A stretch of DNA of 64,000 nucleotides. Source: Podarcis vaucheri (Eukaryota). Each line of letters starts with the position of its first letter. The first letter of the stretch is position 1. The stretch lies in assembly GCA_965113315.1 (NCBI GenBank), contig OZ220365.1; one strand, given 5' to 3'. Made by a program: the position numbers and the translations under genes. Shown here one piece after another: positions 7,661 through 64,000 of the stretch. The notes beneath the pieces are model-generated. The model ran no database searches. It was not told the DNA's origin and worked only from the letters and a program-made list of their open reading frames with translations.

Positions 7661-7829
7661 TCAATACTTCAGGGAGTCAATTCTTAATGATATCCGAAAA
7701 GCACGTAACTTATACACAGGAAAAGAACTAGCCACAGAACTGGCCAGGATACGACAACGGGTGGATAACATTGAACTTCTGTCTGCTGACATTGTGATAA
7801 ACTTGTTGTTGTCTTACAGGGATATTCAG
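7661..7829 (+). CDS. MAP3K5: ASK1 exon 5 (169 bp) [15 protein letters not shown]...LSYRDIQ
   Basis: ctag|T ... CAG|gtaggc; frame continuous. Confidence 0.95.
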
Positions 7830-8718: not shown

Positions 8719-10610
8719 TTCAAAACGTGTCCTACAACCCTGGTAATGCCTACCACACAAAAGTAAACTTTGCATTAGCTTGCCCTGCCCACTTTTGTCT
8801 CTCAGCCCACCTACCATTGGGCATGTGGCCCTCAGAAGCTTGCACAGAAGGGAATGTGGCCCTTGGGTTCCACACCTCTGCTCCAGAACACGGGTTTTGG
8901 CTACGTGAGCAGTGAGTGGCACACACACCTGAACATCAGAAACAGAGGGAATTAATATCTGCTGCAGGCACCCATTTCAGGAAATTCTCAGAGCAAATGC
9001 TTCACTAGTAAATGGATCTGGGTCAGCTGCTGCTTCCAGTGAAAAGAGCATGGTGACGCATGCGGGGAGCTCTGGACAAATGGCTCGCTGGCACTTATGT
9101 CTCACTGCAGAGTGAAAGCACTCATGCAGTTGCCAGATTTTAAAACAGAACTTTGTTGCCATGGCAACTTTGTGTACATCTGTGCCTAGGCCTGTGGAAA
9201 GGGGTGGGTGTATAATGGCTAGGATTCTGAATTCCTTTTTTAAAAAGTCTATTATATTATGCATATTGGAGAACACTGTGTTAAGTTTGGTAGCTGGGTT
9301 ATAAAGAAATTATGTGAGAAAATTCTATGCCTATGCTGGGACTTTTAGCGCAAGCTGAAGGAGTCCCAGTGCAACATAGGAAGCTCTCTCATACTGACTT
9401 AGATCCCCTTTCTTGCTATAGCACTTCACAAAGTGGATGGGGGGGGGATCACTTCTGTAGGGTTAACCCCGCAGAAGTACCATCTGATAGTCTGCAAGGA
9501 ACTACTGTCATATTAAGCTGCAGGAGTCCCAGTGCAACATAGAAAGCTGCTTTATACTGCCTTGCTCGATATTGCCCCCATTGACTGGCAGTAGCTCTTC
9601 AGGGCTTCAAACCAGGAATATTCCCAGCTCTATCTGGAGACGCTGGGACCTTTTGTATGTAAAGTGAGTGCTCTGCAACGGAGCTATGGTCCTTCATGTA
9701 CTTGTTCACATGCTCCTGTTCACACCCTCCTACTTGGAGGAGGGTGAGACAGGAGGGCTCACTTGTATCTCCTTGCATCATTCTAAATGAAAACTATTTT
9801 AAAATCCATCTGTGGAATCCTAACAGCCTATGGTAGTGCTTCTGCTCAAACAGTCCGTGTTCTGCTTCCTGTGCCCAACAAAACTTTATATAGAAATCCA
9901 CTTCCGGTATGACAGGAGGAGCTGCTGTTCGAGTGAGAGCTCTGGAATGATTATATAGCTATGTGCCCAGGAACTGCACATTATATTTTCTTGGTTTCTT
10001 AGGCTGCTTTCACACGAACCCACACTGACATCCTTCATTCACTTTTTATGGGGCATCCAGACAGCATCATTGTCAGCCTGTTGCATTTCAGTGTTTTCTG
10101 TTAGCATCTAATGTTTTTTGAGACCTGAGTTGCATTTTATTTTGTTTCGGTTTTTGCAGTAAAGCAGCAGCCTGTCTACTTTGGAGATGCAAGGCATTAA
10201 TGAAGCTTTTCAAAGGCTCTTGTGCCTTTTAACTGAAACATTTCCTCCTTGTAAATTCAGTCTGTTTTTATTGCTTCCTGATAAATACAGGTGGGGGATT
10301 GGTGATAACTAGCCTATGTTAATTGCCCTTTCTTAATTATACCTGTGTCAGTTTCTATTCCTGTGTGTAGAGAAAGCTTTAATTATTCATTTTACCTCAT
10401 TTGTTATTTGCTATTAATAGTCCCTTTTCCTGCGAAAAAGAAATATGGCTTAATTATGCTTAATCCAATCACTACCTGCAGTCCATTATTTTTTTCAGTT
10501 CAGGGGCACATTTGGAATTCTGGCACCACAGAATATGCATTTCACAAAAGAAAAACTGGTGATGTTCAGAACCAGCCCACAAACACACAAAAAGGCATCA
10601 AGATCTACTA

Positions 10611-11727
10611 CAGGGGTGCCCAAACTTTTTTCAAGGAGGGCCAGATTTGATGAAGTGAAGGGCCGTGAGGGCCAACCAAAGTTGTTGCGCTTTTTTTAGG
10701 ATTGAAATTGTTGAGCTTTTTTTTTTTTAGGGTTGAAGTTGTTGAGGGGTTTTTTGAGGATTTTACCCCATAAACTGCTGAAGGGGCCGGATTAGGCCCC
10801 CGAAATGGACTTTGGACATGTCTGTGGTAGAGCCTTTGGCCAACAAGGGAATCAAAGGTGGGAAAGGAGATTGCAGAGGAGCTGAACAGATTATTTGCAT
10901 CTGTCTTCAGAGCAGAAGACTCGCGAGTAACATAAAAGTAATAAGGAGAGATGCGAGCCGGGAAGGGCCCGGCCGGGCGGCGACTCACCTCGCAGGCGGT
11001 GCACCATCCCTTTGGCCCAGGCGAGGCGGCGGCGGCTGCTCAGCGACCTCCTTGCCCGTCTCCTCGTGAGGGAAACGCGGCGTCAGGGCGCCTCCGGCGG
11101 AGCAAGGCCGCTGGCCTGCCTTCCCCTCCGCCTTCCTCCTTTTCGCCGCGCCACCTGCACCTCCGCTGCCTCCCGCTCTCGGCGGGCCCTCCCGGGTGTC
11201 GGGCTCCGAGGGCGAAGGCACCCCACTCCACCACGCCCATCTGCAGCACGGCCCCCGCCGCCACGCTCCCGCCAGCCGCCCTGGCCGCTTCGCCCGCCTC
11301 GGGCTCGAAGCCCGGGTTGTCCCGGCTCCAGGCCTGCCTTGAGCAAGACGAGAGCGGCGGCAACGGCGAGCAAGACGAAGGAGGAGGAAAAGAAGAAGAA
11401 GCGGCGGCGGCGACTCCGCCGCTGCCCGGCGGGTCCCGCAGCCGCCCCAGCTCCAGATGCTCCAGGCCGCCGGGAGGGCAAAGTCCCGCTATGGCCCCCC
11501 GACCCTGGACGAAGGCCGCCGCCGCCTCATAAATTTTCACTCAGGCCGGCCAAGTAACGGCGCGGGAAGGGAGCGCCTTCGCTTTCTCCACCGTCCGCCT
11601 TCCAGCCCCCCAGCCCCGCCCACAGCGCACTGCCTCGCAGGGGGAAGCGGGCTGGCAGCTACACGGGCCACATGACGAGGTCTGGCGGGCCGGATTTGGC
11701 CCGCGGGCCTTGTGTCTGACACCCGTG
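10611..11727. mobile_element. Composite hAT (Charlie-like) element carrying a captured PKD2 5' fragment
   Basis: Perfect TSD ATCTACTA (10603-10610, 11728-11735); ends CAGGGGTG / CACCCGTG; hAT subterminal GGGCCGGAT.TGGCCC motifs; additional internal right end finishing at 10824. Confidence 0.88.
10989..11530 (-). pseudogene. PKD2: Transposon-captured, frameshifted copy of polycystin-2 exon 1
   Basis: PPLSSCSRQAWSRDNPGFE at 11360-11304, upstream GLC..GLE...RDPP, and LAWAKGMVHRLRG|GTGAGT phase-1 donor at 10989/10988 (human as recalled: RVAWAERLVRGLRG|). The segments lie in different frames. Confidence 0.88.
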
Positions 11728-12129
11728 ATCTACTACTACCCTACCAACCAATATAAACAGACTAAAAGGGAGGCAACCCTCCCCCAAACCCTCATTTTGG
11801 TGGGTGGGCAAGTTGCCTTGGTAGGTGCTGCATTGGGGACATCAGGCTTAAATTAGTGTTTTTAAAATGGACAGTGCAATTTTATGCATGTCTGCTCAGA
11901 AGTAAGTTGGTGGCAGTTGAATGGAAGCAGAAAGAGGATGGTTGAGTAAAAGCTCTTTCATTAGATAATGAAGAACATTATGATTATATTGTCCACTTTA
12001 ACTTGTGCCTCTTCAGGTGCAACTGTTAAATCATTTTGTCATGTCAGAAGTGCACCAGCAAAGTTTACTCTTATTTCCCTTTCTTGCTATAATGACTTAA
12101 ATAAATCCTTTCATGCTGTTTCTTGGAAG

Positions 12130-12236
12130 GATTATGATTCTATTGTGAAGCTGGTAGAGACATTAGAAAAACTTCCAACCTTTGACTTGGCTTTGCATCA
12201 TCACGTGAAGTTTCATTATGCATTTGCACTGAACAG
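12130..12236 (+). CDS. MAP3K5: ASK1 exon 6 (107 bp) [10 protein letters not shown]...YAFALNR
   Basis: aag|G ... AG|gtaaga. Confidence 0.95.
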
Positions 12237-14314: not shown

Positions 14315-14958
14315 CCGTATTTTGCGCCCCATAGGACGCTCTGGCCCATAGGACACACCTAGTTTTTTTGGGGGGAAATAAAGAAAAAAAAATTATTTCC
14401 CCCCCAGGTGCGGGGCTGGAAGAACCAGGTCGGGGAACAGTGGGAAGGCACGCTCTGCCTCCCCGCTGTCCCCCGAGCTTGTGGGGCTGGCGATGGGGAG
14501 AAGTGCGCTGATCCTGGGACTGCAGGCAGCTCTGCGCCGCCATCCGGAGCGGGGCGGGACTTAGCGCCCCGCTCCCGATGGCCGCGCAGAGCTGCGCTGA
14601 TCCCGGGACTTAGCACCCCGCTCCCGATGGCGGCGCAGATCTGCCTGCAGTCCCGGGACGGCAGGCAGCTCTGCGCCGCCATTGGGAGCAGGGCGGGGCT
14701 TCGCTCCCGGCTCCCGGTGGCCGCGCAGAGCTGCGCTGAACCGGGGACTGCAGGCAGCTCTGTGCAACCCTCGGAGCTGGTCTCCCGAGGGTTGCGCAGA
14801 GCTTCCTGAAGCCTGGAGAGCGAGAGGGGTTGGTGCGCACTGACCCCTCTCGCTCTCCAGGCTTCAGCGAAAGCCTGCATTCGCCCCATAGGACGCACCC
14901 AGATTTCCCCTTCATTTTTGGAGGGGAAAAAGTGCGTCCTATAGGGCAAAAAAAACGG
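14315..14958. mobile_element. Tc2-like (TcMar) non-autonomous element with GC-rich repetitive interior
   Basis: TA TSD; TIR CCGTATTTT.CGCCCCATAGGACGC. Confidence 0.88.
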
Positions 14959-17638
14959 TAATCTCCAATTCACTGCTTTGCTACATAATGCAATAGTCTT
15001 TGATTCCCGTTCTTTATGTTGATTGCTACCATTAGAAATAATGCTTCCCCTACACCCCCCACACCCCTACTTTTTCTTTCCTGGAATAAGTTAGGCCTCA
15101 CCTGACCCTGGGCCCTCCCTCTCTCCTCCAATTTCTTTTGATCTGCATTGTAGTGGGACCTGACACTGATTTCAGTTACATTTGGGGAAGCTCGTTGGAC
15201 CAGGATTTGAAACCTTTTGCCATATATAATATATAAGCTGCTATGGTTATATGCCCTAGCATAACCCTGCAGAGAGGTCGTTATCAGTGGGGCAAGCTCA
15301 GAACTGGGCAGCAAAATGTTGGGCTACAGTGCAGCCAATATTCCATTTGCAATGCCGCCGCTGTCTTCTGGCAGCTGCCAGTTTATTTCACACAGTGATA
15401 TCTGTGGTGGCTTGGGAAATAGGTGGGACAAAACAGCTTCTGTTAGGAAGTGGCAGCAGATAACAAGAAGCAGAGGGCAACTGATGGGGCTCTGAACTTT
15501 GGCTTTCTTTCTTATCAGATTTGGAAGCTCCGCACCTGGACAAATTTGGTCTTCCTCAGAAATTCCTTTAGCTATCTAGCAACAAAGGTGTGCTTAGCAC
15601 GGCATAGAAAATACAAGGCATTCTGTCCCTGCATAAGAATATGCAGGGGCAACAATTTGGTTTTTTAAAATATTATTTTAAAAAGGGAAATTGAACATTT
15701 CCTGGCTTTGAATGGGTATAAGGAGGACAAGGCTTGCATTTGAGCTGCCTTTGCCAACTTAGTTCCTTGTGAGCAGAGGCTAATGGGACTTGTAGGCCAA
15801 AACGTCTGGAGGGCATCCGGTTGGTGAAGGTTCAACTGAAAAGGGGCAGAAAAGATTTCATGGAAGAAGGTTGTTTTGAAGTGGGGTATGGAATAGGATG
15901 AGTTGTGTGTGTGTCACTGGGCAAGCAAAGATGACACAGTGGAAGGGGATAGGCCAGTTCCCAGAGTCAACTGAAATGATATTTGGCAATCTCTTTTCTC
16001 TTGACTAGTAATGTGTTCACATTGTAAGGAAGTTCTAGCTGTAATCTGTGAGCCATGATAGCTTTCACAGTCCTTGTGATAGTTGTAGTTATGGCACAAT
16101 ATGTCTAAACTCATCATCATCATAAAGATATGTACAGAAAGTTCACCTTTGTTGTAATCTTGAAGAACAGAAAGTGTGTGTGGGTACCAGTTTTAAGTTT
16201 TGAATATCTCATAATGGTAAAATGTAAAATACTTTAGGCAACTTGAGGTAGGAGTGAGGCTTGTTCTTCTAATGTTTCAGCTTGAAACAATGCATCATTC
16301 CTTTGGCAAATAATGGGGTGGAAGCAGAATCATGTGAGTCTACTGCTCAGAACAAATCCACTTGGAACAAAGTGTCATATCCAGTTTAGGGACTTGTGCC
16401 TTTCATGTTTGATAAGCAGAGAGCAAAGTGGCAACCGGGAAGTAAGCAGGTGAGAAAAAAATCTGCAAAAAATCTGGAGCAAATGTTGCCACCACTTAAT
16501 CAGCATTTTACAAAATGGTTACATAACATATGTGACTTGAAATGGACTCTGTATTAAGTGAATGTTTAGCCTCTTACAGCCATGTTAAATTTCTCATATC
16601 AGTCAGCTTTCTAGATGGAAAGTTGAGGACAAAACAGAGATAAAATATAGTTGGAATTATGTGGAGAAAATCTAATTAATTTGGTGATTTTGCCTCTTTG
16701 GGCATTCTTTATTTGTTCGTTATTTTACAAAGCTGCAAAGCACAGAAAGGCACTCTTGAATGCCTCCTTCATTGTGTTGCTAGGGAAATATGGAGAGGGC
16801 TGCTTACCCAGGGATGCTTCAAATGTGACTAATTTCCTGCACGTATAGCTTCTGTATAGAACAGCTATACAAACAAGGTCTAGATTACCATGTGTGACAA
16901 TTGCACATGGGATTATTTTTTAGCATATAAACACACTGTACAAGCAGCAAAAGTAATCTGTATTTGAGAGTCGATGGCTTGTTTGTGTGCTTTTTCTACT
17001 TGGAAAAGCTGTATGCTGGAATCGGTTGCATTAGAAGCAATTCTGCATCTCAAAGAAACTTGCATTAATTTGAGGTCAGCCAAGGAATGAATGTTTCTGA
17101 TGATCGTGAGAACATGGAATGGGAAGACCTTCAAAAAGTGGTCAGTGCAAGAATGGATTCTTCCTGCACTGACCAATCAGCAAGTAGTCTTTATTATTAT
17201 TATTATTTCCTACTTGAGAGCAACAAACTATTTTTTTAAGTCAAAAAGCCTCAACTGACTGTGACAGATTATGAGATCCATTTCGTGTTGCTACCTTTAT
17301 TGCAACCTGTTATGTTAAAACTCCAGATGAAAATCATACTGCAAAGAGAAACTATTCTGTAATATCTGAACAGAGAGTTTACTAAAATGTTCCCTGTTTC
17401 ATATGCATTATGTCATGCTGCCAGATGCCTACAGTATAATTTTCTGTGAAGAGCAAAAGGAGAAGGTTATTTTCATTCGATTTAATGAGACAGCTATCTT
17501 TTCTCTCTGCCTTGCCCGCCAGCTCTATTCAAATTCTAGCCATGCTAAAAGAACGCAAAGTGTTCAGATATCAGGACAACAGAGAATTATGACAAATTCA
17601 AATGTTTGTATTCTTTTTTATATATTAAAAAACCCCAG

Positions 17639-43601: not shown

Positions 43602-43753
43602 NNNNNNNNNNNNNNNNNNNNNNNNNNNNNNNNNNNNNNNNNNNNNNNNNNNNNNNNNNNNNNNNNNNNNNNNNNNNNNNNNNNNNNNNNNNNNNNNNNN
43701 NNNNNNNNNNNNNNNNNNNNNNNNNNNNNNNNNNNNNNNNNNNNNNNNNNNNN
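43602..43753. other. Assembly gap (152 N)
   Basis: run of N starting 7 bp into intron 16. Confidence 0.99.
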
Positions 43754-47852: not shown

Positions 47853-48235
47853 TATAAGCTAATTTATAAAAACAAATTAAAAAGCCCCTAAAAACTAATT
47901 TCATAAAAAACTAATTTCTGTAGAAAGCATGAAAGGGTCCAAATGTTACTTTACATAATAAACCTAGAGAAATCTAGAACTCCAAAATCTCGTAATAAAT
48001 ATCAAAATAGCCAATTGTTCATAATACGTTTGAAAGAATTTGAATTCTCTTGTTTTTATTACATGCATTCCATAATGAAGTTTCATTGAACTAGAAATGA
48101 AGTGACTAATAGTAGCTTCCACTTAATTCCTCTTTTATTACAAGCCATTTCATCATTAATTTTAGCTGCAAACTCTTTTTCAAGATCAGCCATAAGATAA
48201 AAAAAAATAACAATCCCAAATATTCTCCCCTCCAG

Positions 48236-48341
48236 GGTGATAATGTACTTATCAACACATACAGTGGAGTGCTAAAGATTTCAGATTTTGGGACATCAAA
48301 GAGGCTTGCTGGCATAAATCCATGCACTGAAACATTCACAG
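48236..48341 (+). CDS. MAP3K5: ASK1 exon 18 (106 bp) GDNVLI...[19 protein letters not shown]
   Basis: ccag|G ... G|gtatgt; DFG and activation loop. Confidence 0.96.
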
Positions 48342-49184
48342 GTATGTTTCTAAAACATATTGCAGAGTCGCCTAATTTAAGAGTAAAAGAATATTCTAGA
48401 GCATAAATTAGATAAGGCACTTACTCCCAGGACAGCTTTAGTTCTGTACATTTTTGAAAACCCTGATACGGGATGAGATCCCAAGCACACTGACTTGCAA
48501 AGTTGCACTGAAGTCATTGGGAAATGTTTTCAAGAGGGTGGCTTTATTCATTGAACAAGTTGTGGTCATCAGATAAGTATTAATAATCTGCCTGCGCAAC
48601 ACGCATAGCAGTTTCCTTCACTGTTATCAGCAACATTCCTGGTCCCTGAATCAAGAGAAACCCAGACTGCTGCAGCTTCCTGACCTTCCATATTATAAGG
48701 AAACATTCTGATATAGCTGGAAGCAATACGTCTGCTTAGATGAGCGAAGATGTGTGTGTTCTGTTCCTCAGTCTAGCAGCTAAGACAGCATGCATCCATA
48801 GATACTTTGGTATCAGCATACTGTTTGAGACAGTATGTTTCTTTGTAGACTTTGTTCCCTGCCTCATTTCCCCTTTCTTGCTAAACAGCTAATGAATGAT
48901 ACTCAGATTATCTGACTGAGCTTCACACATGCAGATTTGAATCATGTTCAGAATGTATTTTGATTACCATTCTCTTCATTTTTAATTTCAATTGATATTG
49001 ATGGTAATGGTGATATTAAATTCAGTATTATAGTCTTACTTTTATGCAAACAGAACTTGCATAAAAGCAGTGTGGCCTAAGGTAAGCTACTGCTGCATCG
49101 CACTTTAGGCCTGCCTTGCAGAGAAAGTCTAGATATATTTATAAATAAATTCAATCTCTTAGTCTCTCCCCATAATTCTGTTTA

Positions 49185-49799: not shown

Positions 49800-50036
<237 letters not shown>

Positions 50037-50314
50037 TAAAAGAGACGCTGATCTGGAGAAGAGCCATAAGATGAAACACTCATCTGTGTGTGTCTGTGAG
50101 GAATAATATATTTTGCAGTAGTGATTCAGTTAAAAGGGAAAATATGCTAAAGAGAGAATATTAAAAAGTTGTTCAAATTCCAATGAATGCCTCCCTGGGA
50201 ATGAAAACCAGTTTCAAATGGAAATGCTAATGACTTTATGTAATGTTTTATTTTAAGGAGACTCCTCTCTGTGGTGGAAGGTCTTGATTGTCTTTCCTTT
50301 TCTGTATTTGTCAG

Positions 50315-50492
50315 GTTGGAATGTTCAAAATACACCCTGAGATTCCTGAATCCATGTCAGCAGAGGCAAAAGCCTTCCTATTGTGCTGCTTTGAACCAGA
50401 TCCAGACAAGAGAGCCTGTGCTAACGAGCTTCTTATAGATGACTTTTTAAAGGTTACAAGCAAAAAAAGGAAGTCTCAGTCAAAGTTAACAG
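50315..50492 (+). CDS. MAP3K5: ASK1 exon 20 (178 bp) [11 protein letters not shown]...QSKLT
   Basis: tcag|G ... G|gtaaag. Confidence 0.95.
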
Positions 50493-50953
50493 GTAAAGAC
50501 CTATTTATGCCTAGCTCAAAGAGCTTAGCAATTCTGTTTAATTTAGCCAACACTGACAGCTTCTTTGAGAAGCTCAACACAGAATCACTAGCATACTTAA
50601 AATGTGCCTTTAATCAACCAGTTTGCCTCGAATAAGTGTTTTTTAAATGTTTATGATACTATTTGTTAATATTTAACTTCCCTTTGAAAGCATTGAGACT
50701 TACTTAAGAGAGTAATAACAGGCTTGTTAATTTTCCCCCCCAGTGAAAACAAGTCATGAATAACTTTAGCTAGATTGAGGCCTTTATGTGTGTCTTAAAA
50801 TAATCCTTAAAACACAAAACCCCCTCTGTTTTAAATTCTCTGAACATCCCCCCCCCCCGGTAATATGGTCAAATTACCTGTTGCTAGTTCTACATCATAA
50901 GTGAATTCTGGATGGTTTCAGTTACTTTTCCTTTTCTATTTTTTCTCTCACAG

Positions 50954-51190: not shown

Positions 51191-51527
51191 CCGTATTTTT
51201 CGCTCTATAGGACGCACCTGACCATAGGACGCACCTTGTTTTAGAGGGGGAGAACAAGAAAAAAATTCTCCCCCTCTCTGCACAGCACCCCTTCAGCGAA
51301 GCGGCAGGGAGCTCCCACTGCACTCTGGAGGCTTCAGGTGGCTATCCTTGAAGCCTTGAGAGCGAGAGGGGTTGGTGCACACCGACCCCTCTCGCTCTCC
51401 AGGCTTCAGAGGCTTCGCATTGCTATCGCTGAAGCCAAGGAGGCTGCATTCACTCCATAAGACGCACACACATTTCCCCTTAATTTTTGGAGGGGAAAAT
51501 GTGCGTCTTATAGAGCGAAAAATACGG
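51191..51527. mobile_element. Tc2-like non-autonomous element
   Basis: TA TSD; TIR CCGTATTTTTCGCTCTATA.GACGCAC. Confidence 0.9.
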
Positions 51528-51828
51528 TAATGATGCAATCACTCCTGTGCTATTAATGCAGATCCCAGACTTGTACATGTGGGAGGGGATTTTCACAGGG
51601 TATAATGAAGTCTCTTTCCCCACTAAAGCCACATTTCCTTGTGGTCCAGTTCACTTTATCTGGACATTATCTTGGATGTGAGCATCACATCAACTCCCAT
51701 AGGCCCCACAGGTTACATATGCTTTGCATGCTAGATGACATGGATCATTGCTAATGTTTATTATAATTCACTGTGTCCAGAAGGCTTGATTACACTAATT
51801 TTCTGGGTTTCTTCACTTCCATAAGCAG

Positions 51829-52006
51829 AATACCTTCGAAGCATATCTTTGCCTGTTCCTGTTGTTGTAGAAGATACTAGTAGCAGCAGCGAATATGGCT
51901 CTGTTTCACCTGATACAGAATTAAAGCTTGACCCATTCTCTTTTAAAATGAGAGCCAAATCTTGTGGAGAAAAGGATGCAAAGGGGCTAAGGTCCCTTTT
52001 TCTAAG
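51829..52006 (+). CDS. MAP3K5: ASK1 exon 22 (178 bp) EYLRSISLP...RSLFLS
   Basis: aagcag|A ... AG|gtaaaa; contains the 14-3-3 motif. Confidence 0.95.
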
Positions 52007-52098
52007 GTAAAACTTCCATATTGCTTTGTGGAAAGAAACTGACTTTTGCAAATAAATTTAGTGGTTTTAATAGCAGTTTCTAATTTATATATTTTCAG

Positions 52099-52267
52099 CA
52101 TCCCAGATGAGAATTTTGAGGACCACAGTGCACCTCCTTCACCTGAAGAGAAGGATTCTGGCATCTTCATGCTCAAAAAGGATAGTGAACGGCGAGCCAC
52201 CCTTCATAGAATCCTAACAGAAGACCAAGATAAGGTGGTGAGAAACTTGATGGAAGCCTTAGCACAG
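52099..52267 (+). CDS. MAP3K5: ASK1 exon 23 (169 bp) IPDENFEDHSAPPSP...EALAQ
   Basis: tcag|C ... CAG|gtaaac; preceded by a 92-bp intron. Confidence 0.95.
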
Positions 52268-52976
52268 GTAAACAAATACCCTTAGCATAGTTAACAGTAA
52301 AATAAGTGCTTGTAATCAGAGGACTAGCACATCCCAAACTGGAAGTTTTTGCAAGGTTTCATTGATATTACTCTGGTGTATTTGTTTATGATTGATAATT
52401 TAGAACACCTTTATCAGATGACTGAGTGTTTAGGGGCTCATTTAGTGGGGATACATAATTAAATGCAAGTACCTCTGCAAGACTTAAGACTGCAATCCTA
52501 TATACACTTAAGCAGGAGTAACTAGTATGGAACTATAAAGTTCAGTGCACTGTATAACAAGTTATTTAAGACATCCTAGGATTGTGCATAGCAAACACCC
52601 AAATGCTGCAAATTAGGCATGCACTTTGAAAGCAGAGGCTTTTTTGTAGAATAATATTTCTCAGAAATAATTGGCTTTACGAAGTAGTAAAAAGTAGAAG
52701 CAGAGAAGCGTAAAATACTATATGGTGTGCACAAGTCAAACTTGAATTCTCCTCAGGTTCTAGGTCTCTAGTAAACAGTAATCCACATATTTGGGGGCTT
52801 TTGTCTTTAAAAATGAAAGCAGAAACAGATTACTAGATAGCTGGATTATGTAAAACTTCTACAGAATAAAAACATGTCAATCAAGATATGTATAGTGACA
52901 AATGCTCTATTTGACTCTCAGAGACTATAGTTTGACTTGGAAACAGAAATGCAAAAGTATTTGTGTGGTTCTGTAT

Positions 52977-56400: not shown

Positions 56401-56595
56401 TTCTGGAACCCTGCAGTTTCTGTTATATACATCCCATAGCTAAAAGAGCACAGTATTTGCAAAAAGACTGAATTGTTGAAGCCTTATGGAAATCTATAGA
56501 TGGAAGTAGTGCCTAGAGGAATATTCACTGTATATTTTCACTATTGCCTCATGATTACACAAAGGTAATTAGCTATTTTTTGTTTGTTCTAACAG

Positions 56596-56781
56596 GGACC
56601 TGAAGAGCCTAAGCTGAAATGGGAACACATCACAACTTTAGTCGCCAGCCTCAGAGAATTTATACGGACAACTGATCGCAAAATTATTGCAAATACACTT
56701 TCAAAGCTAAAACTAGAGCTAGACTTTGACAGTCAGGGCATCAGCCAGGTTCAGCTGGTCCTCTTTGGTTTCCAAGATGCA
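56596..56781 (+). CDS. MAP3K5: ASK1 exon 24 (186 bp) GPEEPKLKWEH...FGFQDA
   Basis: acag|G ... GCA|gtaagt. Confidence 0.95.
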
Positions 56782-56879
56782 GTAAGTATACATTTCTCTC
56801 TTTTTTGCTAGTTTTGCTAAACTGATTTTTCATATACTGATGAATGTCTTAAATCTGCAACACAATTGAGTGAAAGTTA

Positions 56880-59847: not shown

Positions 59848-60683
59848 GGTAGGAAGTGTGCAGTTTGGTCTAGATGGATTTATAAAATGTTTGAAAAAAA
59901 TCAACTCTGGTCAGAGGCATGGAAAATAGTAAGCCCTGAAGCATTTGCTGTATGAAAAGTGCTCCGGCTTAGTGACCAGGAAAGAGCTTTAGAGATTATT
60001 TTTGAAAAATCCCATAAGCCTTCCATTCTGCATGCAGCTGCAATGAGTATTTGCAAGACATGAGAATGAATTGCCTGATAGATGTAGTGCAAATCCTAGT
60101 CAGCACTTGTTGATTTAGTAGCTGCCGCTGGTCAGACCTCAAGGCCTGTGTGTAGTGCAGAGGTTGCTGTACATCTCTTATAACGATCAGCCTACGTGCC
60201 AGTCCTACATCCTATAAAGGACATGGCTGTTAGAATTAGTAATAATTTCTTTTGGTTGCAACTGCATCCCACTTACATAACCAAATCAAAGCAGCTTACA
60301 ATATAAACACAATAAAATGCCAACATTGCATCAAAAGCATATCCATAAAATGAAATGGAATGGAATGTAAAGCAAGAGCAGTATAGAACCACGCGAGGCA
60401 GGACAAAAGTGATGGCTTGGCAGGCCGATCAGTGGAGTCTACTAGTACAGTTTTATTATGTACAGTGCTTGGAGAGCTTTGCAGCCAAGTGGTTTATAAA
60501 TCTTTGTAAATACAATTAATTAAATACATAATTACTACAAAGAAAGCAAGAGTCAAACAAGCCTGGTAGGAGGAAAGAAGGTAAGCAAACAAGGAAAAGT
60601 GCAAGAACAGCCTGAGGGGTGAGGACCCTGCGGCACATGCTTCGTAGGCAGAAGATCTCAGGTTCAATCCTTGGCATCTCCAC

Positions 60684-61148
60684 CTGCTGCTTGCGTGAGT
60701 GCTGGGAGGACCGCTCCCTTTCTGCCAATTCCATCTGGCCTAGGGGGCGGGGCTGCATTCATCGCCACAGCATAAGAGGCCTGGGAGAGGCCTCCGGGAC
60801 ACGACTGCTGGTGCTGCTGCTTGCGTGAGTGCTGGGAGGACCGCTCCCTTTCTGCCAATTCCATCTGGCCTAGGGGACGGGGCCTGCATTCATCGCCACA
60901 GCATAAGAGGTCTGGGAGAGGCCTCCGGGACACGACTGCTGGTGCTGCTGCTTGCGTGAGTGCTGGGAGGACCGCTCCCTTTCTGCCAACTCCATCTGGC
61001 CTAGGGGGCGGGGCCTGCATTCATCGCCACAGCATAAGAGGTCTGGGAGAGGCCTCTGGGACACGACTGCTGTTGCTGCTTCGTGAGTGCTGGGAAGACC
61101 GCTCCCTCTCCTGCCAACTCCATCCGGCCTAGGGGGCGGGGCCTGCAC
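60684..61148 (+). repeat. Tandem array of about 3.5 x 130-bp GC-rich units
   Basis: TT(G)CGTGAGTGCTGGG recurs at 60691, 60821, 60952 and 61080. Confidence 0.93.
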
Positions 61149-61495
61149 TACCATCACAGTTTAGAGGACAGAGCAGCTACCGGCAGCAATGGACAAAATA
61201 GTTTTAAATGTTTTAATTGCTTTTAATTTGCAGCACCTTAAATGGGGGTTGTTGTTTTTTATAATATTATATTATTTCATTATCTGCTGCAAATGTTAAA
61301 GATGTTTATATATATTTTAAGGTGTTTTAAAGGTGCTTTTATTGTTTACTTTGTTGTACCACCGTGAATGGTGGTTTTTATTTATGTATTTTTGTTGTTC
61401 CATTTTGTTTTGTTTTTGGGGTTGGACACTGAGTGGGGCGGGGATTGGTTTTGTTTGGGCATAATTGTTTTGGTTGTTTTGTTTTCTATTTGTAA

Positions 61496-64000
61496 ATGGA
61501 GGTTAGTATGAGGCTTGGGATTGCGACCGTGGAGGGGCGAGGGAGGTATGGCGGTGGGGGCAGATGTTATAGGCGAAGGGGATCGAGATATGGATATGCT
61601 CGTACCCCTTCCAATCTGCGCCCCATCCCGAGAGACGAGGGTAGGGTGAGCAAGGATTACTCACCTCCTTCACTGGTGTTGTGCAATGCCAGGTCTATAG
61701 GCAACAAAACTGCTACCCTGCGAGATTTCTTTATCTCGCAGGGAGTTGACCTGGCTTGTGTGACGGAGACCTGGGTGCGCGAAGGGGTAACTGTTACCTT
61801 ACGAGAGATGGCGCCCCCGGGTTTCTCCGTCCTCCACCAGTCACGGACTGTGGGCCGGGGGGGAGGGGTGGCAGTATTAATCCGGGAAGATTGTTCTTTC
61901 AGGGCTCTACCATCGCCATCGATCCCCGGCATTGAATGTGTTGGCCTAGTGTGGGGCTCCGAGGAGAGCTTGGCTGTCTGGCTGGTGTACCGGCCACCTA
62001 GCGCACCAGCAGCCACCCTGTCAGGCCTGCTGGAGGCGGTGGCCGGCTGGGCCTTGGAGTTCCCTAACCTATTGGTATTGGGAGACTTCAACTTCCACGC
62101 TGATGCCACTCCCTCCTCACAGGCTCTGGACCTGGTGTCTTCCATGGCGACACTAGGGCTCTCCCAGTTTGTTTCGGGCCCCACACATCAAGCAGGCCAC
62201 ACGCTGGATTTGATCTTTGGCGCCGGTATAGATGTGATCATCTCTCCTTCGATGAAGGTGCCATGGTCTGATCACTACGCTCTGAAAGCCAGGATTGACT
62301 TTCCACCCCCACCCTGCTTAGGTGGCGAGCCGATTTGGGCTCGCCCGCGGAGGCTGATGGACCCGGATAGATTCCGTCAAGCCTTGCGGGACCTTGCTCC
62401 CCCTGGCGACTCATTGACTGAGCTTGTTGAGGGCTGGAATACCCAGCTCCTGGCAGCCATCGATGAGATCGCACCTAAGCGCCCTCTGCGACCCCGCAGA
62501 AACCGGGCTCCCTGGTTTACCGAGGAGCTTCGGAAAATGAAGCGGGACCTCAGACGGCTAGAGCGAGTATGGCGGGGTGCCCGTGACGGAGCCTCAAGAA
62601 CATCTTATAGGGTTTTTATGAAAACCTATGAGATGGCAGTGAAGGCTGCTAAGAAGTCTTACTTCTCGGCCTCCATTGCATCCGCTAGCTCTCGCCCGGC
62701 ACAATTATTTAGTATAATTCGGTCTTTAACGTCCCTTGAAGGACAGCCAAATTTAAATAACAATCTGACACACAGCTGTGAGGCATTTGCGAGCTTTTTT
62801 GCGGAGAAGGTCCTGTTGCTCCGCCATGACCTCTCTGCCAATTTGGATACAATAAAGGAACTGGAGGCCCCTCGACTGTCCTCGGGTCCAGTATTGGACC
62901 ACTTTGACCGGATATCTCCAGCTGATGTGGACAGATTCCTCCAAGCTGGAAAGCCCACCACCTGTCCTCTTGACCCGTGCCCGTCATGGCTGATTAGAGC
63001 GTGTCCAGACGAGGTGCGGGGCCCCCTGGGGGATATCATCAATTTGTCCCTTGGCACCGGGATATTCCCAGGGGAACTGAAGGAGGCGGTGGTGCGTCCG
63101 CTCTTAAAGAAAACATCATTAGATCCCTCAGATCTATCCAATTACCGCCTGGTCTCGAATCTTCCATTCCTGGGTAAGGTGATTGAGAGAGCGGTTGCTG
63201 AACAGCTTGGTAGGTTTCTGGATGAAACATCTGCTCTGGACCCATTCCAGTCCGGCTTCCGCGCTGGTCATGGGACCGAGACGGCTCTGGTCGCCCTAAC
63301 AGATGATCTCCGCAGGCAGCTGGATCGAGGCGGGTCAGGGCTGCTGATTCTTCTAGATCTGTCAGCAGCCTTTGACATGGTCGATCACGAACTCCTGGAC
63401 CACCGCCTTGCCGACGTGGGGATCCAGGGCACAGTCCTTCAATGGCTGCGCTCGTTTCTCTCTGGTCGGGGACAGAGGGTGGCGCTTGGGGGGGAATTGT
63501 CATCACGCCACTCCTTGGTGTGTGGAGTGCCTCAGGGTGCGATACTCTCCCCGATGCTTTTTAACATCTTTATGCGCCCCCTCGCCCAGCTTGTCCGGAG
63601 TTTTGGGCTGGGTTGCCATCAGTATGCTGATGACACCCAACTCTATCTGTTGATGGATGGCCATCCTGACTCGGCCCCAGACACACTGACCAGATGTCTG
63701 GAAGCTGTGGCTGGATGGTTACGTGGGAGCCGGTTGAAGTTAAATCCTTCGAAGACAGAGGTCCTCTGGCTGGGGCGGGAAGATATGGGATCAGGGGGGC
63801 AACTCCCATCTCTTGCGGGGGTGCAATTAGTGCCAGCACCGTCCGTTAAGAGTTTGGGTGTAATCTTCGATACCTCCCTCTCTATGGAGTCGCAGATTAC
63901 AGCTATAACAAAGGCGGCATTTTTTCATCTCCGCCAAGCTAAGCAGTTGGCCCCTTATCTCTCTCGTCCTGACCTAGCCACTGTGATCCATGCGACGGTC
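61496..64000 (+). CDS. L2 endonuclease/reverse transcriptase ORF (open to the window end)
   Basis: ATG at 61496 is in frame with LCNARS and YADD (63623). The motifs VTETW, GDFN, SDH and GVPQG lie in between. The ORF track lists no stop-terminated ORF in this frame. Confidence 0.88.
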   Translation, partial: MEVSMRLGIATVEGRGRYGGGGRCYRRRGSRYGYARTPSNLRPIPRDEGRVSKDYSPPSLVLCNARSIGNKTATLRDFFISQGVDLACVTETWVREGVTVTLREMAPPGFSVLHQSRTVGRGGGVAVLIREDCSFRALPSPSIPGIECVGLVWGSEESLAVWLVYRPPSAPAATLSGLLEAVAGWALEFPNLLVLGDFNFHADATPSSQALDLVSSMATLGLSQFVSGPTHQAGHTLDLIFGAGIDVIISPSMKVPWSDHYALKARIDFPPPPCLGGEPIWARPRRLMDPDRFRQALRDLAPPGDSLTELVEGWNTQLLAAIDEIAPKRPLRPRRNRAPWFTEELRKMKRDLRRLERVWRGARDGASRTSYRVFMKTYEMAVKAAKKSYFSASIASASSRPAQLFSIIRSLTSLEGQPNLNNNLTHSCEAFASFFAEKVLLLRHDLSANLDTIKELEAPRLSSGPVLDHFDRISPADVDRFLQAGKPTTCPLDPCPSWLIRACPDEVRGPLGDIINLSLGTGIFPGELKEAVVRPLLKKTSLDPSDLSNYRLVSNLPFLGKVIERAVAEQLGRFLDETSALDPFQSGFRAGHGTETALVALTDDLRRQLDRGGSGLLILLDLSAAFDMVDHELLDHRLADVGIQGTVLQWLRSFLSGRGQRVALGGELSSRHSLVCGVPQGAILSPMLFNIFMRPLAQLVRSFGLGCHQYADDTQLYLLMDGHPDSAPDTLTRCLEAVAGWLRGSRLKLNPSKTEVLWLGREDMGSGGQLPSLAGVQLVPAPSVKSLGVIFDTSLSMESQITAITKAAFFHLRQAKQLAPYLSRPDLATVIHATV

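What the first reader, a model, noticed from the sequence alone, without database searches (positions are those of the whole stretch)
10611..11727. Vertebrate 'Pack-hAT': a DNA transposon carrying PKD2 exon 1 inside an ASK1 intron
Seen: hAT termini and a perfect 8-bp TSD (ATCTACTA) bracket about 800 bp of CpG-island DNA. On the minus strand it encodes GLCPPGGLEHLELGRLRDPP...PPLSSCSRQAWSRDNPGFE...QMGVVEW and finally LAWAKGMVHRLRG followed by GTGAGT. Established (from memory): human polycystin-2 exon 1 contains PPLSSCSRQAWSRDNPGFE and ends at RVAWAERLVRGLRG with a phase-1 intron. Donor and intron sequence are retained, so this is DNA-level capture, not a retrocopy. Pack-type TIR elements are well known in plants but rarely described in vertebrates. 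Inference: the element moved as a unit and may be multi-copy, dispersing PKD2 first exons and CpG islands through the genome.
Basis: partly seen in the sequence, partly recalled or inferred. Interest (0 to 1): 0.95.

Follow-up and report, generated by a model that had tools for sequence, protein, structure and literature searches.

The report
Lizard hAT transposon carrying PKD2 first exon
A small cut-and-paste (hAT) transposon in an intron of a lizard's MAP3K5/ASK1 gene carries the CpG-island 5' flank, first coding exon and splice donor of the polycystin-2 gene, and it belongs to a family of roughly tens of such copies found in several related lizards, which makes it a clear but not unprecedented vertebrate case of gene-fragment shuffling by a DNA transposon.

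Summary
A 1,117-bp element (10611-11727) has hAT-type ends and a perfect 8-bp target-site duplication (ATCTACTA). It lies in the MAP3K5 intron between two consecutive exons. Its interior, on the minus strand, is the complete first coding exon of lacertid PKD2, plus 167 bp of 5' flank and 164 bp of intron 1 behind an intact GTGAGT donor.

New here:
- The left 214 bp are a complete canonical high-copy MITE, so the cargo starts exactly at a transposon terminus.
- The right end is a 68-bp fragment of a related MITE end.
- The composite is multi-copy (roughly 20-40 copies by contig depth) in at least three related species, fewer in a fourth.
- Podarcis lilfordi has PKD2 exon-1 gene models on two chromosomes other than the PKD2 chromosome.
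- The window copy is a decaying pseudo-exon (ATG to ATA, four frameshifts) but still a CpG island (observed/expected 0.89).

Pack-type hAT elements in vertebrates are already described (Tan et al. 2021), as is 5'-end capture by bat Helitrons. This is therefore a new member of a known kind, notable for its copy number and telling anatomy.

First readers flagged about ten similar elements with other cargos elsewhere in this genome, all unchecked. The right junction, the empty site and the parental locus could not be checked.

The parts
10603..10610 (.). Left copy of the 8-bp target-site duplication, ATCTACTA
   Evidence: It is identical to 11728-11735.
10611..10824 (+). Complete canonical high-copy hAT MITE. 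It has the left terminal repeat CAGGGGTGCCCAAAC, 31-bp subterminal tandem repeats at 10691-10755, and its own right terminus at 10824.
   Evidence: 113-127 contigs per run diverge before 10611 and 114-139 diverge behind 10824, into unlike flanks that end or begin in CTAGAG-like target sites. Word depth is 146,000-190,000 against 29 for single copy. One search gives the tandem repeat; the Anolis hAT-HT2 terminal repeat CAGGGGTCCCCAAAC matches 14 of 15 bases.
10825..10832 (.). TGGTAGAG directly behind the internal MITE terminus. It may be a relic of the target site of that MITE in PKD2 intron 1.
   Evidence: Sequence. Its last five bases match the family target consensus CTCTAGAG seen in the loose ends. 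This reading is inference.
10825..10988 (-). First 164 bp of PKD2 intron 1, beginning with the donor GTGAGT (10988-10983)
   Evidence: No PKD2 exon 2 follows in any frame. This stretch has the same multi-copy depth as the exon. That it is PKD2 intron 1 is inferred from contiguity, not from the parental DNA.
10989..11492 (-). PKD2 first coding exon, now a pseudo-exon. The start codon is ATA instead of ATG (11492-11490). Frameshifts lie near 11219, 11197, 11117 and 11026. The exon ends in phase 1.
   Evidence: 151 of 165 compared residues are identical to Podarcis raffonei PKD2 residues 1-183.
11493..11659 (-). 167 bp of 5' flank or 5'UTR of the captured exon. It is GC-rich and has a GC box (GGGCGGGG on the minus strand). 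It is a possible core promoter.
   Evidence: GC 0.71, CpG observed/expected 0.83; multi-copy depth, with contigs of depth 396 and 528 bridging into the right end. Promoter activity was not tested.
11660..11727 (+). 68-bp right-end fragment of a related high-copy hAT MITE. It carries the terminal inverted repeat (reverse complement CACGGGTGTC...) and two GGGCC motifs in the same register as the canonical right end.
   Evidence: One search gives the alignment; depth is 75,000 in the bin 11676-11749, and the high-copy part starts near 11660.
11728..11735 (.). Right copy of the target-site duplication, ATCTACTA
7661..7829 (+). MAP3K5 exon upstream of the host intron (...LLLSYRDIQ, followed by gt)
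   Evidence: E 6e-29 to ASK1 chain 5ULM, residues 3-60. One search shows the splice sites.
12130..12236 (+). Next MAP3K5 exon (ag followed by [20 protein letters not shown]...)
   Evidence: E 1.5e-17 to 5ULM residues 59-96. One search shows the splice sites.

Best explanation
This is a non-autonomous, Pack-type hAT transposon. One mobile unit (10611-11727) consists of three parts: a complete 214-bp hAT MITE, 835 bp copied as genomic DNA from the 5' end of PKD2, and a 68-bp right end of a related MITE. The PKD2 part comprises 167 bp of 5' flank, the whole first coding exon, the splice donor and 164 bp of intron 1.

Shown: a hAT transposase moved the unit into the MAP3K5 intron and made the 8-bp duplication. 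The same composite exists in roughly tens of copies in several related lacertid lizards. The copies descend from one mutated master rather than from repeated captures.

Inferred: the capture started from a MITE that sat 164 bp inside PKD2 intron 1. I judge the likeliest route (about 0.45) to be repair synthesis or a replication template switch. It was primed in another copy of the MITE, ran off that MITE's right terminus through the PKD2 5' region, and then rejoined inside a right end. The alternative (about 0.35) is that transposase paired the MITE's left end with a truncated right end lying upstream of PKD2.

The copy in this window is now an inert, decaying pseudo-exon that has kept its CpG-island composition. 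It points antisense to MAP3K5.
For: The target-site duplication and the ends are. The left boundary and the canonical MITE's right terminus at 10824 are set by more than 110 diverging contigs per run, with hAT-like CTAGAG target sites. PKD2 identity rests. The donor and intron are kept and no exon 2 is present. There is no transposase in the element.

Multi-copy status: the unique left flank has depth 29.2 in X1, whereas cargo contigs of 112-174 bp with few mismatches have depths 152-396 and the bin sums are 620-1,230. X6 is similar, X3 lower and X12 lowest. Both internal junctions are themselves multi-copy: X3 record 18 spans 10797-10967 at depth 207, X1 record 8 spans 11564-11675 at depth 396, and X6 record 32 has depth 528.

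Dispersal: Podarcis lilfordi has PKD2 exon-1 models on chromosomes of 53.0 and 62.8 Mb, while its true PKD2 lies on a 77.0-Mb chromosome.

One master copy: the window copy and the 62.8-Mb copy share RRW and GEKEE, which no true lacertid PKD2 has. ATA at the start codon is carried by all contigs laid from X1, X3 and X6, but ATG by those from X12.

Host intron.
Against: The right flank (11750-11823 and 11972-12100) has no contig cover in any run, so the right junction rests on the target-site duplication alone. The tool warns that holes prove nothing, and the human-like MAP3K5 exon next door probably caused filtering. The depth sums are by the tool's own warning not copy numbers, so '20-40 copies' is rough. 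No second copy with its own target-site duplication was seen directly. As a result, the MITE in PKD2 intron 1, the origin of the 164-bp 'intron' stretch and the choice between the capture routes are all inferences. No autonomous hAT partner was identified.
Confidence: 0.8

Rival explanations
1. Composite or 'end bypass' transposition. Two hAT ends happened to flank the PKD2 5' region: a complete MITE in intron 1 and a truncated right end 167 bp upstream of the ATG. Transposase paired the outer left end with the distal right end, skipped the MITE's own right end, and moved everything between them as a macrotransposon.
For: The cargo begins exactly at a complete canonical MITE terminus. The 8 bp behind that terminus resemble a hAT target site. 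The distal end pairs slightly better with the left end (8/10) than the MITE's own right end does (6/10). End bypass is documented for P elements, and Tan et al. say their pipeline would miss such cases.
Against: The distal end is only a 68-bp fragment with an internal breakpoint, not a second whole element. The internal right end matches the majority of a family with about 5,000 copy equivalents, so nothing marks it as defective. Excision of such a unit would delete PKD2 exon 1 unless it were repaired.
Confidence: 0.3
2. Transposition-independent gap filling at this site. A MITE already sat in the MAP3K5 intron, broke internally, and was repaired with PKD2 sequence as filler. This is how most single-copy animal Pack-TIRs arise.
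For: Tan et al. 2021 find this route for most animal Pack-TIRs. The right-hand breakpoint is internal to a MITE end.
Against: The same two internal junctions are present at 5-19 times single-copy depth in several species. Copies lie on different chromosomes in Podarcis lilfordi. Copies share derived substitutions. The left junction is at a precise MITE terminus, not an internal break.
Confidence: 0.05
3. Assembly artefact. The assembler joined a repeat-rich contig to the MAP3K5 intron through the high-copy MITE, so that the cargo is not really at this place.
For: No contig covers the right flank. The element's ends are repeats with thousands of copies, which are classic places for misjoins.
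Against: A misjoin would not produce the same 8 bp immediately outside both outer ends while the internal terminus is followed by a different 8 bp. An independently built 1,804-bp contig of X1 runs from 9900 to 10640, across the left junction, without a single difference.
Confidence: 0.03

Closest known systems
Animal Pack-TIRs, in particular multi-copy Pack-hAT such as Pack-hAT-N8_XT of Xenopus tropicalis (Tan et al. 2021, Nat Commun 12:4280, PMC8277862)
   Same: A non-autonomous hAT element flanks a piece of a host gene's 5' end copied as DNA. Copies lie on different chromosomes and have 8-bp duplications. The captured region is GC-rich. A link with chimeric transcripts is predicted.
   Different: That survey found only four multi-copy cases in 100 genomes, the example having three copies of 291 bp of 5'UTR. 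Its main text mentions no lizard. Here the cargo is 835 bp with a whole first exon and donor. Contig depth suggests tens of copies in several species. The cargo abuts a complete internal MITE terminus, an anatomy the authors say their pipeline could miss.
Bat Helitrons carrying 5' gene ends, e.g. [quoted passage not shown] 2014, PMC4224331)
   Same: The cargo is the same kind: promoter or 5'UTR, first exon, donor and the start of intron 1. The cargo is amplified and dispersed in a vertebrate. There is a bias towards 5' ends of genes.
   Different: Helitrons are rolling-circle elements without terminal inverted repeats or target-site duplications, and they capture by read-through of their 3' end. 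Their copy numbers reach thousands. Here a cut-and-paste hAT with an 8-bp duplication is responsible.
Pack-MULEs and other Pack-TYPE elements of plants
   Same: Terminal inverted repeats enclose host gene fragments. GC-rich 5' regions are preferred. About a third are multi-copy (as summarised).
   Different: They belong to a different superfamily (Mutator, 9-10 bp duplications) and a different kingdom. Their parental copies are usually not linked to an element, whereas here the anatomy implies a MITE next to the parental exon.
Anolis carolinensis hAT-HT2 / hAT-N4 families (Novick et al. 2010, PMC3014272)
   Same: The terminal repeat is nearly identical (CAGGGGTCCCCAAAC against CAGGGGTGCCCAAAC). 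Both have 8-bp duplications of the type NTCTAGAN. Their non-autonomous derivatives incorporate extraneous DNA.
   Different: That paper's hAT passages found here describe incorporated transposon fragments, and the word 'exon' does not occur in its main text. No sequence beyond the terminal repeat was compared here.

Membership tests
hAT superfamily, non-autonomous element | 8-bp target-site duplication | tested here: met
   ATCTACTA stands on both sides.
hAT superfamily, non-autonomous element | Short terminal inverted repeats of the CAG...CTG type | tested here: met
   CAGGGGTGCC against CACGGGTGTC agrees in 8 of 10 bases. The left end matches a curated Anolis hAT terminal repeat in 14 of 15 bases.
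hAT superfamily, non-autonomous element | Family-wide target preference nTCTAGAn | tested here: met
   The flanks of more than 110 other copies per run end or begin in CTAGAG-like octamers (loose ends). This is consensus only, with low agreement further out.
hAT superfamily, non-autonomous element | Mobilised by a hAT transposase (an autonomous partner with DDE and hAT dimerisation domains) | not tested
   No transposase is present in the element, and none was looked for elsewhere.
Pack-TIR / Pack-TYPE element | Transposon ends enclose sequence derived from a host gene and no transposase | tested here: met
Pack-TIR / Pack-TYPE element | A parental gene copy exists elsewhere in the genome | tested here: inconclusive
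   Full-length PKD2 lies on a different chromosome from the two exon-1 copies in Podarcis lilfordi. The parental locus of this genome could not be fetched.
Pack-TIR / Pack-TYPE element | Multi-copy through transposition: the same chimeric structure with distinct target-site duplications | tested here: inconclusive
   Multi-copy depth and multi-copy internal junctions were seen. The outer flanks of other copies were not seen.
PKD2 (polycystin-2) exon 1 | Sequence homology along the whole first coding exon | tested here: met
   E 1.6e-8 to PDB polycystin-2. E 1e-26 to Rhineura PKD2. 91.5% identity to Podarcis raffonei PKD2 residues 1-183.
PKD2 (polycystin-2) exon 1 | Ends at the conserved exon 1/intron 1 boundary with an unspliced donor, which makes it a DNA copy and not a retrocopy | tested here: met
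   ...HRLRG is followed by GTGAGT. No residues beyond 183 align anywhere in the window. The Podarcis lilfordi model P0016 splices from this phase-1 donor.
Functional PKD2 coding sequence | Start codon and open frame | tested here: not met
   The start codon reads ATA, and there are four frameshifts.

The most novel reading that the evidence does not exclude
Lacertid lizards may carry a hAT MITE system that repeatedly picks up the DNA next to its insertions in CpG-island promoters. It would then spread whole 'promoter, first exon, splice donor' cassettes in tens of copies each. The copies would stay unmethylated CpG islands that can start transcripts and splice into host genes. That would be a vertebrate equivalent of rice Pack-MULEs or bat Helitrons, driven by a cut-and-paste element that was active after the sampled species split.
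Probability: 0.3. Interest if true: 0.8.

Novelty: new member of a known kind. Interest (0 to 1): 0.6.

Why it matters
Multi-copy gene-fragment capture by cut-and-paste transposons is common in plants but looked nearly absent in vertebrates: four cases in 100 genomes.

This family shows that a vertebrate hAT MITE can amplify a complete 5' gene cassette to roughly tens of copies.

Its anatomy, with the cargo beginning exactly at a complete transposon terminus, gives a directly testable clue to how capture happens.

Each copy is also an ectopic CpG island with a splice donor, so the family is a natural experiment. It can show whether CpG islands stay unmethylated and promoter-active when moved, and how often they create antisense or chimeric transcripts in host genes such as MAP3K5.

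If the other, unchecked notes on this genome hold, lacertids would be a good system for studying exon shuffling by DNA transposons in amniotes.

Tried and rejected
- **The look-up of encoding contigs.** It was closed. The DNA of the true PKD2 locus and of the Podarcis lilfordi copies could therefore not be read.
- **Other copies in the window.** A search for further copies of either end, with up to 3 mismatches, found none. This is unsurprising at roughly one MITE per few hundred kb.
- **Read laying.** It gave no cover of the right flank in any run and no left-flank cover in X3 and X12. It showed no contig skipping the element. So neither the right junction nor an empty orthologous site could be judged. 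All runs laid were contigs, so expression could not be assessed. No RNA run was listed as holding the stretch.
- **Pfam.** The five longest reading frames of the element gave nothing relevant.
- **P0006.** This 6,519-aa protein with 17 matched stretches is a low-complexity chance match without any PKD2 motif.
- **Short 'polycystin-2-like' models.** Those of gecko and anole (P0003, P0005, P0012) read through the donor into the intron. They may simply be the real exon 1 annotated apart, so they are not counted as evidence for mobile copies.
- **Human and other mammalian PKD2 N-termini.** They appeared among the protein hits (for example P0030 and P0054-P0057). They were not aligned, searched or used further.
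- **MAP3K5 exons.** They were searched one by one by reference.
- **Retrocopy.** Rejected, because the donor and intron are present and no exon 2 is.
- **True PKD2 locus.** Rejected, because MAP3K5 exons flank the element.
- **Defective internal right end.** The idea that it was bypassed because it is defective was dropped. This copy shows no listed difference from the family majority there.

Full report
**What is in the sequence**

The octamer ATCTACTA stands at 10603-10610 and again at 11728-11735. Between the two copies lies a 1,117-bp element. It begins CAGGGGTGCCCAAAC, and the reverse complement of its other end reads CACGGGTGTC, which agrees with the left end in 8 of 10 bases. The left end differs by one base from the terminal repeat of the Anolis hAT-HT2 and hAT-N4 families, CAGGGGTCCCCAAAC. 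Those families make 8-bp duplications of the type NTCTAGAN (PMC3014272). None of the reading frames in the element matches a transposase or any other Pfam family at a meaningful score.

**The host gene**

The frame at 7635-7850 matches ASK1/MAP3K5 (PDB 5ULM) residues 3-60 at E 6e-29. The frame at 11965-12237 matches residues 59-96 at E 1.5e-17. The splice sites put the exons at 7661-7829 and 12130-12236. The element therefore lies in a 4.3-kb MAP3K5 intron, 402 bp upstream of the next exon. Its cargo points antisense to the gene. I searched the two exons separately by reference and did not build a joined model. I did not verify that this is intron 5. Further MAP3K5 exons, including kinase-domain exons, are visible downstream in the six-frame listing.

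**The cargo**

The minus-strand frame 11040-11540 hits polycystin-2 chains of the PDB at E 1.6e-8, with the identical run PPLSSCSRQAWSRDNPGFE. A search of 1.8 billion representative proteins gives full-length PKD2 of Rhineura floridana at E 1e-26. It also gives a 94-residue 'hypothetical protein' of Podarcis lilfordi at E 2e-38.

A frameshift-aware alignment to PKD2 of Podarcis raffonei (P0038) shows the following:
- The cargo covers the whole first coding exon, residues 1-183.
- 151 of 165 compared residues are identical.
- The start codon reads ATA.
- There are four frameshifts, near 11219, 11197, 11117 and 11026.

The exon ends ...HRLRG with one base of the last codon, followed by GTGAGT (10988-10983) and 164 bp that I take to be intron 1. 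Nothing beyond residue 183 aligns anywhere in the window. This is a copy of genomic DNA, not of a spliced RNA. Upstream of the start codon lie 167 bp of GC-rich flank with a GC box. The stretch 10940-11660 has GC 0.73 and CpG observed/expected 0.89, against 0.19-0.22 in the flanking kilobases.

**What the public runs add**

Contigs of four runs from four coded organisms were laid on 9900-12100 at 85% likeness.

1. In every run, 113-127 contigs diverge into unlike sequence just before 10611, and 114-139 do so just behind 10824. The unlike flanks end or begin in CTAGAG-like octamers. So 10611-10824 is a complete, canonical hAT MITE. Its word depth in X1 is 146,000-190,000, against 29.2 for the unique left flank, which is thousands of copy equivalents. 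This confirms the earlier first-reader note of an internal second right end (s1-849518).
2. The last 68 bp (11660-11727) are also high-copy, with depth about 75,000. They align without gaps to the canonical right end, including two GGGCC motifs at the same spacing. They are a fragment of a related MITE's right end.
3. The cargo between them has bin depths of 620-1,230 in X1. It is made up of contigs of 112-174 bp with few mismatches and depths of 152-396. In X6 the flank depth is 28.1 and the cargo bins are 527-2,448. X3 is lower and X12 lowest. The tool warns that such sums are not copy numbers, so I read them only as 'roughly tens of copies'.
4. Both internal junctions are themselves multi-copy. 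X3 record 18 covers 10797-10967 at depth 207. X1 record 8 covers 11564-11675 at depth 396. X6 record 32 has depth 528. The composite, not just the exon, is the repeated unit.
5. An 1,804-bp contig of X1 runs from 9900 to 10640 without a difference and so bridges the left junction.
6. The right flank has no cover in any run. The tool says holes prove nothing. The neighbouring, highly conserved MAP3K5 exon probably caused the contig to be filtered out.

No empty-site contig was seen, so I cannot say whether this particular insertion is shared between species.

**Evidence for dispersal and a single origin**

In Podarcis lilfordi, two annotated 'hypothetical proteins' carry the PKD2 exon 1: P0001 (94 aa) and P0016 (250 aa). 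They lie on chromosomes of 53.0 and 62.8 Mb. The true PKD2 (P0144) lies on a chromosome of 77.0 Mb.

P0016 has an intact exon 1 that is spliced, at exactly the phase-1 donor, to unrelated sequence. It is a predicted chimeric transcript, and I do not know whether RNA supports it.

The window copy and P0016 share RRW and GEKEE where every true lacertid PKD2 has RRR and GEE(G/E)E. They therefore descend from one already mutated copy.

At the start codon (11490), every contig laid from X1, X3 and X6 has the ATA form, and the contigs of X12 have ATG. This suggests that most amplification in three of the species came after that mutation, meaning activity continued after the species began to split.

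**State of this copy**

Among the 27 listed cargo positions where other copies differ, 15 are A or T here against G or C elsewhere, and only four show the reverse transitions. At nine positions no X1 contig shares the window's letter. One example is 11003, where CpG became CpA and turned KGMAH into KGMVH.

Several frameshifting or in-frame deletions of this copy are filled in other copies. Examples are 11 bp behind 11220, 6 bp behind 11296 and 6 bp behind 11085.

The copy is therefore not young and cannot encode a PKD2 N-terminus. Yet it has kept 84 CpGs in 721 bp. This is compatible with a still unmethylated island, but methylation was not tested.

**How the capture probably happened (inference)**

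The cargo starts at the exact terminus of a complete MITE, and the next 8 bp (TGGTAGAG) resemble a hAT target site. The cargo was therefore most likely the DNA that flanked a MITE inserted 164 bp into PKD2 intron 1. The other junction lies inside a right end.

Two routes fit these facts:
- **Repair synthesis or a replication template switch.** It was primed in the MITE at PKD2, ran off its end through intron, exon and 5' flank, and rejoined within a right end. This is close to the FoSTeST model of Tan et al. I prefer it slightly because the distal end is only a fragment.
- **Composite or end-bypass transposition.** It used a truncated right end that lay upstream of PKD2.

hAT elements are known, from my own knowledge of Ac/Ds, Tol2 and Hermes, to prefer open chromatin at 5' ends of genes. 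That would explain why the first readers' other notes on this genome list first exons and CpG islands of other genes as hAT cargo. Those notes are unchecked.

**Comparison with what is known**

Tan et al. 2021 (PMC8277862) found 370 Pack-TIRs in 100 animal genomes, 208 of them with hAT ends. Only four were multi-copy: three in Xenopus tropicalis and one in the alligator. Multi-copy cases tended to capture GC-rich DNA. Their main text mentions no lizard, and they state that their pipeline may miss end-bypass cases.

Bat Helitrons carry and amplify exactly this kind of cassette: promoter, 5'UTR, first exon and part of intron 1, with NUBPL reaching a thousand copies (PMC4224331).

The present element is therefore a new member of a known kind. 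What it adds is a cut-and-paste example with a whole first exon, a copy number well above the published vertebrate Pack-hATs, presence in several species, and an anatomy that points to the capture route.

**Limits**

- The single read-laying run returned contigs only.
- The organisms are coded.
- That the genome is a Podarcis or close relative is inferred from the exon's 91.5% identity to Podarcis raffonei PKD2, against 88.3% to Lacerta and Zootoca.
- Human and other mammalian PKD2 N-termini that appeared among the hits were not aligned, searched or used further.

Noticed in passing
window 61496-64000 (+): An open reading frame of at least 835 codons runs off the window end. It has endonuclease-like and reverse-transcriptase-like motifs (for example YADDTQLY). 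It looks like an apparently intact non-LTR retrotransposon ORF2 inside MAP3K5.
   Followed up: no
It is probably the BovB/RTE coding region.
   Followed up: no
window 14335-14960, 51211-51530 and 60616-61223: GC-rich stretches share near-identical translated motifs (for example EREGLVRTDPSRSPGF and EREGLVHTDPSRSPGF). They look like several copies of one interspersed repeat, and the last stretch is internally tandem.
   Followed up: no
window 11871-11971: Another repeat starts at 11871. There, 41-46 contigs per run diverge, and depth is about 40 times single copy. It lies about 140 bp to the right of the element.
   Followed up: no
window 43602-43753: A run of 152 N (assembly gap or masked stretch).
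   Followed up: no
window 48116-48403, 49800-50036, 50288-50632, 51825-52282 and 56593-56808 (+): Further MAP3K5 exons are visible by eye in the translations, including kinase-domain exons ([60 protein letters not shown]). The window therefore spans a large part of the gene.
   Followed up: partly
protein P0016 (Podarcis lilfordi, CAI5787293.1): This annotated gene model joins an intact captured PKD2 exon 1, at its phase-1 donor, to unrelated downstream sequence on a non-PKD2 chromosome. It is a predicted chimeric transcript of a sister copy.
   Followed up: partly
proteins P0003, P0005, P0012 (gecko and anole 'polycystin-2-like' short models): These are separate short gene models that hold only PKD2 exon 1 and read into the intron. 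They may be the true exon annotated apart from the rest of the gene, or further dispersed copies in other squamates. This is unresolved.
   Followed up: no
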